64,000 nt of DNA from Macrostomum lignano (GCA_002269645.1 NIVC01000129.1:480755-544754), one strand, 5' to 3'. Numbered from the stretch's first letter, positions 32,547-54,000 are shown. Notes: generated from the letters alone by a model not told the origin. Made by a program: numbers and translations.

Positions 32547-35500
32547 ATGAACAACACAAGTTCTGCAAATTGCCTACTGCGGTGGCTTGTATGCTGCTGC
32601 TACTGCTTCTCACTTTTCACCTGCGACATCAGGTGGGATTACGTCAAGATGCCGGACTTCAGAGGCACCGAGTATATATTTCGTTACCCAATTGCTAACA
32701 CGGATCCTGTTGAATCCGACAAGTCTCTGTCGTATGCCACTTACGCCTCGAGCTGCTTTAATCTGACCGAGAACTCTCACCGAATATTTGCGCCGCTAAA
32801 TGACACCAGAGCCTTAGACGCGTTCACTAAGTTGTTTGCAGAAAAGTGAGTTAATCAATACCTTCCCCTTGTTTATATAGATGCTTATATATAATAGATT
32901 TCTATTGATGCACGAGTCCCTTGTAATTCAAACTCGATTGTCAAAACATGTCATGTTTACCCACTGAAATCATGCATCATATGTATATCAAAGCTTCACT
33001 ATTAGCAGTGTATCCGATTATCCTCACAAACCGCTTTTAACTGCAGTGGCACCGTGAGCTACGCCGTATACGACGATGAGCTCTGCACCAACTGGACCTA
33101 TCAGCCTTATTACTACACCGGAGGAGACCCGGTGCCACTGGCCTGGAACATGTTCGGGCCGACTTTCACCCCGCCAGCATCGCTGTGGGACAGTGCAGTG
33201 ATTGATTCAAAGTTTAACTTGATCGGACTGAAAAGAACTGCGAATACATTTCAGTACTCTGCCGTGGCGAATAACATTCTAATGTACCCTGTGTGCGAGT
33301 ATTTTCCATCCCGTAAGCCAGAAGTCCTTCGTTTCTGCGATGTCTGCCTGCCTGCTGTCTATCTCATTATCTGTCTGTCTCATTGTCTGTCTGTCTGTCT
33401 GTCTGTCTGTCTGTCTGTCTGTCTGTCTGTCTGTCTGTCTGTCTGTCTGTCTGTCTGTCTGTCTGTCTGTCTGTCTGTCTGTCTGTCTGTCTGTCTGTCT
33501 GTCTGTCTGTCTGTCTGTCTGTCTGTCTGTCTGTCTGTCTGTCTGTCTGTCTGTCTGTCTGTCTGTCTGTCTGTCTGTCTGTCTGTCTGTCTGTCTGTCT
33601 GTCTGTCTGTCTGTCTGTCTGTCTGTCTGTCTGTCTGTCTGTCTGTCTGTCTGTCTGTCTGTCTGTCTGTCTGAGACATGAATGACAAAAAAATCATTAA
33701 CCATTGCAGCGAATAGCTCGGCAGCGACTATCATGGGGGCTTGCAGCAATGCATCGGTTGTAGCCAGCGAGAACGGATCAATGCTAAACCAGAGCTACTG
33801 CGTGCACGACGTCCAGCAAAAACTCGACCAGGATTACAAAGGAAACGTCGGTGGCTACAGTCTGCTTTGCGAAAAAGGAGGCGGCCGCAACGCGCAGGCA
33901 GAGACCGAAGAGAAGAGAACAAAACTATGGTTTGTTTTTTTTATTTAAACCTAACGCTTTATTTAAACAAAAAATAAACAAACAAATACTGACAACCGTA
34001 AAGCATGGGTGTGGGTCATTAAGCAATAAGAAATCCCTAGTTTTCTTGTATCTATAAGTCACTTCAGTTGAGATTTTTCAGGTGTGTCAGACTCAAAATA
34101 AATAATGAAACTAAACCCTCTGAAACACATCTGACCAGGCGATTCCTCAATGAGTCCCTGAGAAATAGGGTTGCAATAGGCGAATACCTGATGTTGGCGC
34201 TCATGTTCGACACCGGCATGACCAACTGGCGACGTCAGTCCTTCTGCCTTCCCGGAACCCCCTGCCGGTCTAACATCAACAAAGACATCCTTGGCCAAGA
34301 CAAAACCAAAGGAATGATAGTGCGTTACAAATGGAAGGACTCAATGCCAAAGGAAGTAAAAAAGTCTGATTATGACCATCGGTGCGCGGTTCTGTGCACA
34401 GGTACGCGTTTTGCAGCTGTTTTTTATACTTTTTCTCATTTTCCTGTTCAACTATAGATCAGCCGATGGAGTTTTCATTTGAATTACAATTCCAAATGCA
34501 GCCATGGTTTGTCCAAATCCTCACACGGAAGTCCAACTGAGTCAAAGGCACTTAGTTTGCCCCTCCTGGAACAGCTCGCTATCGGCAGCCGAGCTTCAGC
34601 AGAATAAGCTGCCCTTTCATGAGATTGAGTACAAATGCGATTCGAATTTCGTGTTTATGGGCGCCGAATGGAACAGCAGCATCGTTAGAAAATGCACACA
34701 GGTACTATTATTAGTTGGCTACTATTGAGTCAACTTCAGTGTTAGCTAAATTTCGCTAATACTGTCTCTAAGACATGCATGTTGTTTATCCGACCGAAAG
34801 TGCAGTGCATGAGTAAGATATACTAGAATTATAAAATATTTATCCAACTTAATCCCCGCCGCTTCAGGACGCCGTGTGGGACAGTGGAATCCCGACCTGT
34901 GTGTCGCTGCCGTGCACACAGATGCCCGTCTATCCGAACGAAACAGCCGTCATAAGTAGCTTTACAGTCAGAAGCGTCACTTACAATTTTGCCGAGGGCC
35001 AGCTTCTGATGCACCTCTTGTCGAATGGAACATTTCGTCCGGGCGACAAGATCGAGATCGAGTGCAAGTCGGGGTTTACAGGCTCCAGCCAGACCGCCTC
35101 CTGCATGCCTGGCGGCAGCTGGAGCCCCGTCACCATGGATTGCAGCCCCGGATACTGTGGCGGCGTTTCCGTCCCTCCGACCGTGGCCAACTCGCAGGCC
35201 AACGCCACCCTCGGAAACACCTCCTGGGAGGGCGCCAGCCTCGCCTTCACCTGCAACACAAACTACAGCGTCAGCGGCCTGCCCAACGGATCTGTCAGCT
35301 TCGTCATCAGCTGCATCAACAGCAGCTGGACCTCGTTCGCCCACCTGAACTGCCGACCGACCGCCTGCTCGAGTCTGCCGCCGGGACTGGGAAACTCCAG
35401 CCTATACAGCTCGCTGAACCTCGAGCAGGAGCTGCAGACGGGTCTGCCGGCTTCCGGAGTGCAGGTCAACGACAGCCTCAGCTACGAGTGTCGGCCCGGC

Positions 35501-51000: not shown

Positions 51001-54000
51001 GCAAAAGAATGTACACCACTCTGGGCAATCTAGTTATAGATACCGGTATATAAATTTTGTATTGAACTGCCGTCTTTTTCAATAACAAGCCATCTCCGAA
51101 TCTTTTGTAGAGCACTGCAACAACAGTCTCTTGGCTCAGCTGGTGGGATTTGGACTGGTCGACTTCCCCACCAGCTCCTACACGGATCCCGACCGAGTGG
51201 CCAACGTTACCTGCCTTTCGAACGCCTTCGCTCCGCTGGCGGCGAACGTCAGTCTACAGAGCGACTCGCAGTTCCTCCTACAGGCGGTCTGCACCGCCGG
51301 AGACTGGACGGTGCTCAACCAGCTGCTGCTGCCGACATCGGAGACTCTGTGCCAGCCGAAGCCCTGTCTGTTGCCTACCAACCTGACTCGATCTACAGCC
51401 GTGCCCAGCAACAACCTGGGAAACGTGACTACGGGAGACGGTCAGGTGTACCTGCCAGTGAACAGCAGCGTGGAAGTGAGGTGCTGGCCCAACAGCCGCT
51501 TCGTGGACGCGTACGCGAGCTCTCGGACGGCGACATGTGAAGCAGGTTTGATTTTTCTCATTTTTGCTGCTAAATCTGGTTGCTAGCTCGTATAATTTTT
51601 CATCAAAATTTGTATCATTTAGGAATTTAATAGACAAATGTACTCGTAATAGCTCGTATATAGGATTCTTTAAATTTTCAATGCCAACTATTACCTTACC
51701 TGATTCTTGAAATCGAATAATCAATTTACTGATAGTTTATAGAAGTGCTTTTCGTGTGGATAAATAAAAATCGCCTAGGAATGACATGAGCAATTGGCAG
51801 GACAATTACCAGACAAACAAGTAAGCAACTAACCCAGGCACATGAAATAAATTAACAACGCATATTTCTCAGGCCCCCAGTGGAGCACAGATGGCTCCAT
51901 GAACTGCCAGCCGATCGTCTGTCTGGACAGCCAATTTGGTCCTAAAATGGATCCCAGCATTCTGGTCGGTCCTCTGAACGCCTCCATCCTGGCCGAGTCT
52001 GCGACCGGGCCGTTCCTCATCGGAGACCAGGTGGCCTTCGCGTGCCGGGAGAACATCTCACAATCAGGTCCCGTTCTGCTCAACTGCACCGCTGATTTGA
52101 ACTTCACGGGCATTTGGCAGCCGAATGCTGTAGAGCCTTTCTGTCCAAGTAATTTAATGCTATGTGCGTTGATCAGAGAAGAGTCTAAATTATTATCAAA
52201 TGCTTTATGCGTGACAAATTTTAAACAATCCACAGAACACTGCAGCAACAGCCAGTTGGATCAGCTTGTGGGCTATGGACAGGCGGTCTTCTACAGCAGT
52301 CCCAACACCGGGTCCAATCACTCTGCCAACGTCACCTGCTTTTTGAGTGCTTTCGCTCCGCTTGTGAACAGCAGCATGTACGGCGGCTCCCAGTTCTCAA
52401 TGCAGGCGGTCTGCAACGATGGAAACTGGACGGTGCTCAACCAGCTGCTGCTGCCGACATCGGAGACTCTGTGCCAGCCGAAGCCCTGTCTGTTGCCTAC
52501 CAACCTGACTCGATCTACAGCCGTTCCCAGCAACAACCTGGGAAACGTGACTACGGGAGACGGTCAGGTGTACCTGCCAGTGAACAGCACCGTGGAAGTG
52601 AGGTGCTGGCCCAACAGCCGTTTTGTGGACGCGTACGCGAGCTCACGGACGAAGACATGCGAGCTAGGTCTGATTCGATCGTTATGGAAATATTTTTCTT
52701 TGCCAGTTCTTTAAGCTCCGAGGGCAGTTTCGAATCTAAAACTCCAGCTAAACGGGCGACTTTATCCTGAGTTTCTGGGATTAATTATTTGTAAATCTAG
52801 GTCATTGAAATTTTAAAACCGTACCTCACGAATCTCATCTGCAGGACTTTGACAGAGCGCGTGCGTAAGGGTGTACGTAGCATTGCCGAAATAAAAAGCA
52901 ATAAGTTAGGAATCACGAACATAATTCGCCCTAAATGATAGAGATTTTAACTGTGTACTCGAATTAAGTTTAAATGAAAATTAGAAATAGCTTCGAAATG
53001 AAATGAATCAGATGATTAACTGGCAAGCCAAATACCAGACAAACGAATAAGCAACTAACCCAGGCCCATCAAATACCAGAGAATTAACAACGTATATTTC
53101 CCAGGACCTCAGTGGAGCGCAGGAGGCTCCATGAACTGCCAGCCGATCGTCTGTCCGGACAGCCAATTTGGTCCTGAAATCGATCCTAGCATTCTGGTCG
53201 GTCCTCTGAACGCCTCCATCCTAGCCGAGTCTGCGACCGGGCCGTTCCTCATCGGAGACCAGGTGGCCTTCGCGTGCCGGGAGAACGTCTCACAATCAGG
53301 TCCCGTTCTGCTCAACTGCACCGCTGATTCGAACTTCACGGGCATTTGGCAGCCGAATGCTGCAGAGCGTTTCTGTCCAAGTAATTTAATGCTATGTGTG
53401 TTGATTAGAGAAGAGTCTTTTTATTATCAAACGCTCTTATGCGCAACAAATGTAAACAATCCACAGGACACTGCAGCAACAGTCAGTTAGATCAGCTTGT
53501 GGGCTATGGACAGGCGGTCTTCTACAGCAGTCCCAACACCGGGTCCAATCACTCTGCCAACGTCACCTGCTTTTTGAGTGCTTTCGCTCCGCTTGTGAAC
53601 AGCAGCATGTACGGCGGCTCCCAGTTCTCAATGCAGGCGGTCTGCAACGATGGAAACTGGACGGTGCTTAACCAGCTGCTGCTGCCGACATCGGAGACTC
53701 TGTGCCAGCCGAAGCCCTGTCTGTTGCCTACCAACCTGACTCGATCTACAGCCGTTCCCAGCAACAACCTGGGAAACGTGACTACGGGAGACGGTCAGGT
53801 GTACCTGCCAGTGAACAGCACCGTGGAAGTGAGGTGCTGGTCCAACAGCCGTTTTGTGGACGCGTACGCGAGCTCACGGACGGCGACATGCGAGCTAGGT
53901 AAGATTAGTGTTTCGGTTTGAGTCGTATTTTTATAACGATGTCCTTCAATTTTATTGTTTTATTCAAACCGTTAAAATGTGAACAGGTGTGATGTCTTGT

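What the first reader, a model, noticed from the sequence alone, without database searches (positions are those of the whole stretch)
34868..51545. CCP exons are homogenised between paralogs while head exons and flanking introns have diverged
Seen: the 973-nt exon of A (34868-35840) and B (49977-50949) differs at only 7 of about 324 aa, and the 435-nt exons are also near-identical. Exons 1-5 are far more divergent (many substitutions and indels), and the introns flanking the conserved exons differ in length with no visible similarity (166 nt vs 2.5 kb; 583 vs 161 nt). Inference: exon-restricted gene conversion, possibly cDNA-templated, keeps the stalk constant while the head diversifies.
Basis: partly seen in the sequence, partly recalled or inferred. 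Interest (0 to 1): 0.7.

Follow-up and report, generated by a model that had tools for sequence, protein, structure and literature searches.

The report
Exon-limited gene conversion between flatworm paralogs
Two neighbouring copies of a Macrostomum (flatworm) gene for a Sushi/CCP-repeat protein are old duplicates whose two longest exons have been repeatedly copied onto each other, a clean but ordinary case of gene conversion that stops where the introns no longer match.

Summary
Tandem paralogs A (32.5-37.9 kb) and B (42.1-54.5 kb) differ at 28 of 973 nt in exon 6 (7 aa) and 24 of 435 nt in exon 7. Exons 1-5 are 58-71% identical. Synonymous divergence is about 1.1 to saturated in exons 1-5, 0.09 in exon 6 and 0.15 in exon 7. 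Introns 1-6 align no better than shuffled sequence. A change-point model puts the low-divergence block within 7 nt of the exon 5|6 and 7|8 junctions.

Best explanation: recurrent interlocus gene conversion between old paralogs, templated by genomic DNA and confined to exons because the introns had already lost homology. It is layered and mosaic. Exon 6 has two age layers, exon 7 is a patchwork, and B carries three tandem exon-7/8 units. A's intron 7 and exon 8 match B's third unit, while A's exon 7 matches B's first.

The cDNA idea is unnecessary: no intron was lost, and some exchanges carried intron or flanking DNA. "Constant stalk, diversifying head" is not supported: head omega is about 0.17, and the boundary cuts through the first CCP domain. 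The pattern follows exon structure, and the two longest exons are the homogenised ones.

This is a new example of a known process, of modest interest.

The parts
32547..34401 (+). Gene A exons 1-4, the 'head', an orphan Cys-rich region (exons 32547-32845, 33047-33312, 33710-33929, 34169-34401)
   Evidence: GT-AG model with an open frame. dS vs B is 1.1 to saturated. No Pfam hit. The exon 3/4 junction is the least certain.
34502..34701 (+). Gene A exon 5: N-terminal about 85% of the first CCP/Sushi module; NOT homogenised
   Evidence: dS 1.35 and 71% nt identity vs B exon 5. The Sushi match spans the exon 5|6 junction.
34702..34867 (+). Gene A intron 5 (166 nt), no homology to B intron 5
   Evidence: SW z = 0.2 vs shuffles. 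Identity is 15-30% immediately outside the acceptor.
34868..35840 (+). Gene A exon 6 (973 nt): end of CCP1 plus four CCP modules; homogenised with B exon 6
   Evidence: 28 differences and dS 0.092. Two layers: codons 1-105 dS 0.24, codons 106-324 dS 0.03. The last 205 nt are identical. Pfam Sushi hit.
35841..36423 (+). Gene A intron 6 (583 nt), no homology to B intron 6 or to B's inter-unit introns
   Evidence: SW z = -0.3, 1.3 and 0.8.
36424..36858 (+). Gene A exon 7 (435 nt), a mosaic: the 5' 200 nt are of the B7a type, the 3' half is shared by all four copies, and the last few nt are of the B7b/7c type
   Evidence: 53 sites group A with 7a and 1 groups A with 7c in nt 1-200. All pairs are about 95% identical in nt 201-end (alignment).
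36859..37904 (+). Gene A intron 7 plus exon 8 (37629-37904): homologous to B's THIRD unit (intron 7c + exon 8c)
   Evidence: Intron SW z = 32.6 and 70% identity. In exon 8, 23 sites group A with 8c and none group A with 8a. dS is 0.40.
42064..47458 (+). Gene B exons 1-5 (42064-42359, 42901-43166, 43579-43798, 46920-47158, 47259-47458); intron 3 is inflated by a retroelement fragment
   Evidence: RNase H and zf-RVT ORF at 44160-44840 on the minus strand.
47459..49976 (+). Gene B intron 5 (2518 nt)
   Evidence: No similarity to A intron 5.
49977..50949 (+). Gene B exon 6 (973 nt), the homogenised partner of A exon 6
50950..51110 (+). Gene B intron 6 (161 nt); shared with the M. lignano paralog P0002, not with A
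   Evidence: The P0002 read-through matches 50085-51050 at 94%.
51111..51545 (+). Gene B exon 7a (435 nt), the homogenised partner of A exon 7
   Evidence: 95.4% identity. Similarity starts 2 nt before the exon.
51873..54546 (+). Gene B extra repeat units: exons 8a 51873-52148, 7b 52236-52667, 8b 53105-53380, 7c 53467-53898, 8c 54271-54546. Includes a young 904-nt tandem duplication (51779-52675 vs 53005-53906)
   Evidence: Open frame through all units. The young duplication has 94% identity, exon dS 0.02-0.06 and introns 86-91% identical.
63547..64000 (+). Paralog C: 5' flank and the start of exon 1, truncated by the window end
   Evidence: 96% identical to B 41820-42272. Flank 234/245 and exon 203/209. 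P0005 residues 1-37 match 63888-63998 at 100%.

Best explanation
A and B are old tandem duplicates of a Macrostomum-specific gene that encodes an orphan Cys-rich head followed by 8 (A) or 12 (B) CCP/Sushi-like modules. Since the duplication, their two longest exons (973 and 435 nt) have been repeatedly homogenised by ordinary interlocus gene conversion, that is, homologous repair using the paralog's genomic DNA. The introns had already diverged beyond recognition. Heteroduplex and synthesis-dependent annealing can therefore extend only to the edge of each exon, so tracts end at the splice sites (inferred). The shorter exons (200-299 nt, flanked by heterology) offer about the minimal homology needed and have escaped or nearly escaped (inferred). 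The process is recurrent and patchy. It left at least two age layers in exon 6 and a mosaic exon 7. An older exchange carried intron 7 and exon 8, and unequal crossing-over expanded B's exon-7/8 units. GC-biased repair has raised GC3 in the converted exons (inferred). Shown: the dS step, the unalignable introns, the breakpoints at exon junctions, the discordant segment trees and the GC3 excess. Inferred: the repair mechanism, the homology-length threshold and the direction of transfer.
For: (1) dS is 1.1 to saturated in exons 1-5, 0.092 in exon 6 and 0.152 in exon 7. Four-fold sites give the same result: 52% vs 8.8% differ, P = 4e-18. (2) Introns 1-6 score no better than shuffles. (3) The ML two-breakpoint model gives aligned nt 1206-2600, with exon junctions at 1200 and 2607; 2dlnL = 456. 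The longest identical run is 208 nt, P <= 1e-4. (4) An internal yardstick from the same locus: B's young tandem duplication has exon dS 0.02-0.06 with introns 86-91% identical, and A8/B8c has dS 0.40 with the adjacent intron 70% identical. Exon 6 at dS 0.09 should therefore sit between easily alignable introns if it had co-duplicated with them. (5) Discordant topologies: the exon 7 5' half supports (A,7a|7b,7c) at 53 sites to 1, whereas intron 7 and exon 8 support (A,7c|7a,7b) at 23 to 0. The exon 7 3' half is star-like at about 95%. (6) Layering: exon 6 codons 1-105 have dS 0.24 and codons 106-324 have 0.03, P = 3e-5. (7) GC3 is 0.79 vs 0.61 in A (P = 2e-8) and 0.76 vs 0.64 in B (P = 1e-5). 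This is a recognised signature of conversion (PMC2720389). (8) Non-exonic DNA was co-transferred elsewhere in the family. (9) Family-wide: the M. lignano paralogs P0001 and P0002 share the same near-identical core of about 380 aa, with a diverged first CCP and exon 8. (10) Literature: paralog conversion is usually exonic because diverged introns impede it (PMC3966223). The MEPS is about 200 bp and tracts run from 50 to several hundred bp (PMC3924818).
Against: Only one genome and one A-B pair have nucleotide data. No orthologs from another species are available, so 'paralogs closer than orthologs' could not be shown. The exon-length argument rests on 8 exons (Spearman rho = -0.57, P = 0.14), although the two longest exons are the two lowest in dS (1 in 28 by chance). 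Identity runs to the very last base of exon 6, which requires heteroduplex to reach the homology edge; that is plausible but not demonstrated here. Direction and timing of transfers are unknown. Exon 2 has an intermediate K4 (0.38), so the head may not be fully exempt.
Confidence: 0.8

Rival explanations
1. Conversion templated by cDNA or RNA. A reverse transcript or the spliced mRNA of one paralog serves as the repair template for the other, so only exonic sequence can be transferred.
For: Similarity ends within 2-8 nt of the splice sites at all four boundaries of exons 6 and 7. Exon 6 encodes four and a bit CCP modules with no intron, which could be a relic of RT-mediated intron loss. Retroelement RT/RNase H sequence lies in the locus. 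Reverse transcripts can convert chromosomal genes in yeast (cited in PMC3652778).
Against: The diagnostic outcome of the RT model is precise intron loss, often of adjacent introns (PMC3652778). Here introns 5, 6 and 7 persist in both copies. Divergence jumps across the exon 5|6 and 6|7 junctions, which are contiguous in a cDNA. Other exchanges in this family carried intron 7, intron 6 and 5' flank, so genomic templating certainly operates here. Heterology-limited DNA conversion predicts the same exon-edge boundaries without any extra machinery.
Confidence: 0.07
2. No conversion. Exons 6-7 are under extreme constraint at synonymous sites as well (an overlapping functional element, RNA structure or splicing code), so they diverge slowly while the neutral introns decay.
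For: The region is GC-rich with long alternative-frame ORFs. dN/dS within it is still low (0.12-0.18).
Against: About 90% of four-fold sites would have to be constrained over 1.4 kb, stopping exactly at the splice sites. This cannot explain the discordant topologies among exon 7 halves, intron 7 and exon 8, nor the two-layer structure of exon 6. B7b/7c carry a version of the exon 7 5' half only 70% identical and are still open, so that sequence is not invariant by necessity.
Confidence: 0.03
3. A recent segmental transfer or duplication of the exon 6-7 block followed by wholesale intron turnover (deletions, insertions), or independent exon shuffling.
For: B's introns 3 and 5 are inflated by insertions. 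The locus is structurally dynamic, as B's unit expansion shows.
Against: At dS of about 0.1 the introns should be about 85-90% identical, as in B's own young duplication. A's 166-nt intron 5 and B's 161-nt intron 6 are short, have no detectable homolog in the partner, and show no sign of being insertions. Three separate introns would each need complete replacement.
Confidence: 0.04
4. An assembly or polishing artefact. Reads (for example RNA-seq or mis-mapped short reads) from one paralog were used to correct the other, homogenising exons only.
For: M. lignano is a neopolyploid that is hard to assemble (PMC10733133 abstract). An exon-limited effect is what transcript-based polishing would produce.
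Against: The copies still differ at 52 sites, with a synonymous:nonsynonymous ratio typical of real evolution (35:17) and a smooth 5'-to-3' gradient. UniProt proteins of further M. lignano paralogs (P0001, P0002), absent from this window, show the same shared core. GC3 enrichment is a long-term signature.
Confidence: 0.04

Closest known systems
Mosaic concerted evolution of tandem paralogs by interlocus gene conversion (e.g. Caenorhabditis paralogs reviewed in PMC3966223; mammalian DDX19A/B, TUBG1/2 and BMP8A/B in PMC2720389)
   Same: Region-specific collapse of synonymous divergence between old duplicates, diverged flanks, raised GC3 in converted parts, and tandem arrangement in the same orientation.
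   Different: In the mammalian and several nematode cases the tracts include introns. Here the A-B tracts are confined to single exons, with breakpoints within 2-8 nt of the splice sites, because the introns are already unalignable.
Domain- or exon-specific homogenisation in immune-type receptor families (KLRC/NKG2 paired receptors, PMC3210942; CEACAM family, PMC7042247). Only the abstracts were seen,
   Same: Some exons of paralogs are homogenised while others diverge, producing genes with mixed histories.
   Different: Those cases are interpreted as selection on ligand-binding domains. Here the boundary cuts through a CCP domain and follows exon structure and length instead of function, and nothing is known about function.
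Reverse-transcript-mediated gene conversion / RT model of intron loss (summarised in PMC3652778)
   Same: It would transfer exonic sequence only.
   Different: Its defining product, precise intron deletion, is absent, and intronic or flanking DNA was co-transferred in related exchanges.
Internal repeat expansion by unequal crossing-over in CCP-repeat genes such as complement receptor 1 long homologous repeats (from my own knowledge, not checked here)
   Same: B's (exon 7 + exon 8) unit is present three times, with a young 904-nt duplicate, giving paralogs 8 vs 12 CCP-like modules.
   Different: The units here are two exons of about 1.2 kb. No relationship to vertebrate RCA genes beyond the Sushi fold is implied.

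Membership tests
Interlocus gene conversion / concerted evolution | Region-specific drop in synonymous divergence between paralogs relative to the rest of the gene | tested here: met
   dS 0.09-0.15 vs 1.1 to saturated. Four-fold sites 8.8% vs 52%.
Interlocus gene conversion / concerted evolution | Unusually long identical fragments (Sawyer/GENECONV-type permutation test) | tested here: met
   208-nt run vs a permutation maximum of 78, P <= 1e-4. Two-breakpoint 2dlnL = 456.
Interlocus gene conversion / concerted evolution | Phylogenetic discordance between adjacent segments | tested here: met
   Exon 7 5' half (A,7a) 53:1. Intron 7 and exon 8 (A,7c) 23:0.
Interlocus gene conversion / concerted evolution | Flanking non-converted sequence as old as the rest of the duplicate | tested here: met
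   Introns 5 and 6 are unalignable, like introns 1-4.
Interlocus gene conversion / concerted evolution | Elevated GC3 in the converted region (biased gene conversion) | tested here: met
   0.79 vs 0.61 (A) and 0.76 vs 0.64 (B), P = 2e-8 and 1e-5. Supportive, not specific.
Interlocus gene conversion / concerted evolution | Paralogs within a species more similar than orthologs between species | not testable with these tools
   No nucleotide sequence of other family members or other Macrostomum species could be fetched.
cDNA/RT-mediated gene conversion | Precise loss of the intron(s) spanned by the tract | tested here: not met
   Introns 5, 6 and 7 are present with GT-AG in both A and B.
cDNA/RT-mediated gene conversion | Tract continuity across exon-exon junctions | tested here: not met
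   Synonymous differences 5/159 before vs 9/47.5 after the exon 6|7 junction (P = 8e-4). A sharp step at 5|6.
cDNA/RT-mediated gene conversion | No co-transfer of intronic or untranscribed DNA | tested here: inconclusive
   True for the A-B exon 6 and 7 tracts. Intron 7 (A vs 7c), intron 6 (B vs P0002) and the B-C 5' flank were co-transferred in other exchanges.
Sushi/CCP/SCR repeat proteins (Pfam PF00084) | Profile match above the gathering score | tested here: met
   Exon 6 scores 68.8 and 64.1 bits (cut-off 20.7). Four individual modules score above the cut-off, including the one split by intron 5. The last exon 6 module and the exon 8 module give no hit.
C-type lectin / selectin-like head (considered because of a lectin-plus-CCP analogy) | CTLD profile match or a confident CTLD fold | tested here: not met
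   No Pfam hit at E <= 1. Only Macrostomum relatives among 1.84e9 representatives. The AF2 model is unusable, pLDDT 29.5.

The most novel reading that the evidence does not exclude
Exon-by-exon conversion templated by spliced RNA or cDNA without intron loss. The template would pair only with the exon of the recipient, and the recipient's introns would be retained. This mechanism would actively keep long exons of a lineage-specific receptor family identical while leaving introns untouched. The data do not exclude it for the exon 6 and exon 7 tracts, because DNA and cDNA donors predict the same exon-edge boundaries when the recipient keeps its introns.
Probability: 0.06. Interest if true: 0.7.

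Novelty: new member of a known kind. Interest (0 to 1): 0.3.

Why it matters
The locus is an unusually clean, internally calibrated illustration of how intron heterology and exon length shape conversion tracts. One locus holds a young duplication whose introns are still alike, an intermediate exchange that carried an intron, and old paralogs in which only the two longest exons stay in concert. In practice, gene trees and duplication dates for this Macrostomum Sushi family (and probably others in this neopolyploid genome) will be wrong if built from whole coding sequences, and annotation pipelines may collapse or mis-join these paralogs. It does not reveal a new mechanism. The protein family itself (orphan head plus 8-12 CCP modules, lineage-restricted) is uncharacterised and may interest flatworm biologists.

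Tried and rejected
1. Genomic DNA of other family members: the look-up of encoding contigs for P0001, P0002, P0003 and P0005 returned nothing, and the clusters are singletons. Exon-wise nucleotide trees across the family or across species were therefore impossible, and only protein-level comparison was done.
2. Head domain identity: there was no Pfam hit. A search with exon 2 alone found only Macrostomum plus one spurious repeat protein. AlphaFold on the paralog C head gave pLDDT 29.5, so no fold search was run.
3. 3' ends of A and B: neither tblastx nor sensitive blastn found A/B similarity downstream of exon 8, so the terminal exons are unresolved.
4. Exon length as the predictor of homogenisation: the trend is right but not significant with 8 exons.
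5. Positive selection on the head was rejected: omega is about 0.17 and no window has pN above pS.
6. A head-versus-stalk functional boundary was rejected, because intron 5 splits CCP1.
7. No paper on gene conversion in this Macrostomum family was found.

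
Full report
WHAT IS THERE. The window is eukaryotic genomic DNA. [quoted passage not shown] M. lignano is a neopolyploid (abstracts of PMC5704211 and PMC10733133). I built GT-AG gene models with open frames for two tandem, same-strand paralogs.

Gene A has exons at 32547-32845, 33047-33312, 33710-33929, 34169-34401, 34502-34701, 34868-35840, 36424-36858 and 37629-37904.

Gene B has exons at 42064-42359, 42901-43166, 43579-43798, 46920-47158, 47259-47458, 49977-50949 and 51111-51545. B then continues with 51873-52148, 52236-52667, 53105-53380, 53467-53898 and 54271-54546.

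B therefore carries three tandem (exon 7 + exon 8) units (7a/8a, 7b/8b, 7c/8c) where A has one. A third paralog, C, begins at 63547 and runs off the window.

Exons 1-4 encode a Cys-rich head. It has no Pfam match, and in a search with its exon 2 alone it has no relatives outside Macrostomum among 1.84 billion representative proteins. Its structure model is unusable (pLDDT 29.5). Exon 5 onward encodes Sushi/CCP modules. I could not find the 3' terminal exons.

CHECK OF THE OBSERVATION. It holds in every particular.
- Exon 6 (973 nt in both genes) has 28 ungapped differences and 7 amino-acid changes.
- Exon 7 (435 nt) has 24 differences.
- Exons 1-5 are 58-71% identical, with indels.
- Intron 5 is 166 vs 2518 nt and intron 6 is 583 vs 161 nt. 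After trimming the splice consensus, their best local alignments score the same as shuffled sequence (z = 0.2 and -0.3), as do introns 1-4.
- Nei-Gojobori dS is saturated in exon 1 and is 1.10, 1.56, 1.43 and 1.35 in exons 2-5. It is 0.092 in exon 6 and 0.152 in exon 7.
- To exclude alignment artefacts I used only four-fold sites in codons with identical amino acids. 55 of 106 differ in the head against 22 of 250 in exons 6-7 (P = 4e-18).
- The longest identical run is 208 nt, against a maximum of 78 in 10,000 permutations.
- A maximum-likelihood two-breakpoint model places the low-divergence block at aligned nt 1206-2600. The exon 5|6 and 7|8 junctions lie at 1200 and 2607 (difference density 0.032 inside and 0.318 outside, 2dlnL = 456).
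- At each edge, identity falls from 93-100% inside the exon to 15-40% outside it, within a few bases of the splice site.

AN INTERNAL YARDSTICK. The locus supplies its own calibration.
- B contains a young 904-nt tandem duplication (51779-52675 vs 53005-53906). Its exons have dS 0.02-0.06 and its intron parts are still 86-91% identical.
- A's exon 8 and B's exon 8c have dS 0.40, and the adjacent introns are still 70% identical (SW z = 33).

So in this genome, introns remain alignable up to at least K of about 0.4. If exon 6 (dS 0.09) had been duplicated together with its neighbours, it would sit between introns about 85-90% identical. It sits between introns with no detectable homology. This excludes recent co-duplication.

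THE PATTERN IS A LAYERED MOSAIC, NOT ONE EVENT.
1. Exon 6 has a 5'-to-3' gradient of differences (7, 7, 4, 2, 3, 2, 1, 2, 0, 0 per 100 nt). Codons 1-105 have dS 0.24 and codons 106-324 have dS 0.03 (P = 3e-5).
2. In the first 200 nt of exon 7, A groups with B7a (94.5%) and B7b with B7c (98.5%), with about 70% identity between the two classes; 53 sites support this split and 1 opposes it. In the remaining 235 nt all four copies are about 95% alike in a star pattern.
3. Intron 7 and exon 8 give the opposite topology: A groups with unit c at 23 sites to 0, and 8a groups with 8b.
4. B and C are 95.5% identical in 245 nt of 5' flank and 97% identical in exon 1. Yet C's product P0005 is only about 70-74% identical to B in exons 2-3.
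5. The M. lignano paralogs P0001 and P0002 share a near-identical core of about 380 aa with A and B, running from the end of the first exon 6 module through exon 7. They diverge in the first module and in exon 8. A carries most of the singleton residues, so A is the outlier of the exchanging group.
6. P0002 is a gene model that reads through intron 6, and that read-through matches B's intron 6.

MECHANISM. The simplest account is recurrent interlocus gene conversion using the paralog's genomic DNA, plus unequal crossing-over that expanded B's units. The A-B duplication is old, so the introns lost homology long ago. Pairing between a resected end, or a newly synthesised strand, and the paralog can then extend only to the exon edge, and any non-homologous tail is trimmed. 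Tracts can therefore reach the splice sites but cannot pass them. That step is inferred from standard double-strand-break repair models, not shown here.

The literature states that paralog conversion is usually seen in exons because diverged introns fall below the homology threshold (PMC3966223). Efficient conversion needs roughly 200 bp of homology, and tracts run from 50 to several hundred bp (PMC3924818). This fits the fact that the two longest exons (973 and 435 nt) are the homogenised ones while the 200-299 nt exons are not. With eight exons the rank correlation alone is not significant. GC3 is raised in exons 6-7 relative to the head of the same gene (0.79 vs 0.61 in A, P = 2e-8; 0.76 vs 0.64 in B, P = 1e-5). 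That is the recognised footprint of GC-biased conversion (PMC2720389).

THE cDNA IDEA. Recombination with a reverse transcript is defined by precise intron loss (PMC3652778). Here introns 5, 6 and 7 are all retained in both genes. Divergence changes abruptly across the exon 5|6 and 6|7 junctions, which would be contiguous in a cDNA. At least three other exchanges in the family carried intron or flanking DNA. A cDNA donor is not strictly excluded for the exon 6 and exon 7 tracts, because the recipient's own introns would also stop the heteroduplex. It explains nothing that genomic templating does not, and I give it about 6-7%.

'CONSTANT STALK, DIVERSIFYING HEAD'. The head has dN/dS of about 0.17, and no 25-codon window has pN above pS. 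It is conserved at the protein level and is simply old. The homogenised block also does not coincide with the stalk. A Sushi match above Pfam's threshold spans the exon 5|6 junction, so intron 5 splits the first CCP module. The larger, exon 5 part of that module is diverged (dS 1.35), while its last 11 residues, in exon 6, are homogenised. Exon 8, also part of the repeat stalk but without a Pfam Sushi hit of its own, is not homogenised (dS 0.4-0.5). The boundary is set by gene structure, not by protein function. Exon 2 has an intermediate four-fold divergence (0.38), which hints at an older small exchange in the head as well.

OTHER RIVALS.
- Extreme synonymous constraint cannot produce the discordant topologies or the two layers. 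It is also contradicted by the viable B7b/7c version, which is only 70% identical.
- Wholesale intron replacement would have to hit three short introns completely.
- A polishing artefact is unlikely. There are 52 remaining differences with a 35:17 synonymous:nonsynonymous split and a smooth gradient, and the same shared core appears in further M. lignano paralogs from UniProt. Only raw reads can exclude it fully.

VERDICT. Exon-limited gene conversion is the best explanation (confidence about 0.8). The cDNA and head-diversification parts of the interpretation are not supported. This is a very clean, internally calibrated new example of a well-known process in an uncharacterised, lineage-restricted flatworm gene family. 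It is useful as a caution for phylogenetics and annotation in Macrostomum but not surprising to a specialist, so I score interest at 0.3.

Noticed in passing
window 51111-54546: Gene B has three tandem (435/432-nt exon + 276-nt exon) units where A has one, all in frame (12 vs 8 CCP-like modules). A young 904-nt duplication (51779-52675 vs 53005-53906, 94%) ends 8 nt past exon 7, as expected for unequal crossing-over within the homogenised 3' half of exon 7.
   Followed up: yes
window 9651-14666 (minus strand): A single 1671-aa ORF made largely of about 71 copies of a 54-nt (18-aa) Thr/Ser/Gly/Ala/Pro/Glu-rich repeat (array 10531-14362, 90% matches) plus a 21-nt array at 9803-10325. It looks like a mucin-like secreted protein gene; GC is about 60%.
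   Followed up: no
window 5238-6203 and 23589-24455 (minus strand): Two paralogous ORFs of about 290-320 aa, each with a C-terminal hydrophobic segment, 71% nt identical (5524-6159 vs 23821-24456). A further repeat pair lies at 335-611 vs 22364-22663 (77%). This suggests a second, older segmental duplication upstream of the Sushi genes.
   Followed up: no
window 44160-45821 (minus strand), inside B intron 3: A GC-rich (66%) retroelement fragment with RNase H and zf-RVT matches. It accounts for most of the 3.1-kb intron 3 of B, against 239 nt in A.
   Followed up: partly
window 33341-33673: A (TGTC)n microsatellite of about 83 units fills most of A intron 2.
   Followed up: no
window 41820-42272 vs 63547-64000: B-C homology (96%) starts abruptly 244 nt upstream of the start codon. 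Upstream of that point the two loci are unrelated. C's product (P0005) then drops to about 70% aa identity to B in exon 2, giving a second mosaic in the family.
   Followed up: partly
window 28307-28955 and 26515-26882: Further tandem arrays: a 21-nt unit x 31 copies (91% matches) and a 14/41-nt unit array. Purpose unknown.
   Followed up: no
protein P0003 (UniProt A0A1I8JCK7, M. lignano): This family head fragment is labelled 'Conjugal transfer protein' in UniRef, which is evidently an automatic misannotation. P0002 and P0005 contain intron read-through, so public gene models for this family are fragmentary.
   Followed up: partly
window 37234-37341 vs 22703-22805: A short (about 105 nt, 76%) dispersed repeat inside A intron 7. 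It probably accounts for part of the extra length of A intron 7 (770 nt) over B intron 7c (372 nt).
   Followed up: no
window 37905-41800 and 54547-63500: No A/B similarity at the DNA or translated level downstream of exon 8, so the 3' terminal exons (membrane anchor or tail, if any) of both genes are unidentified. Read-through past the exon 8 donor would end after 7 (A) or 9 (B) further codons.
   Followed up: partly
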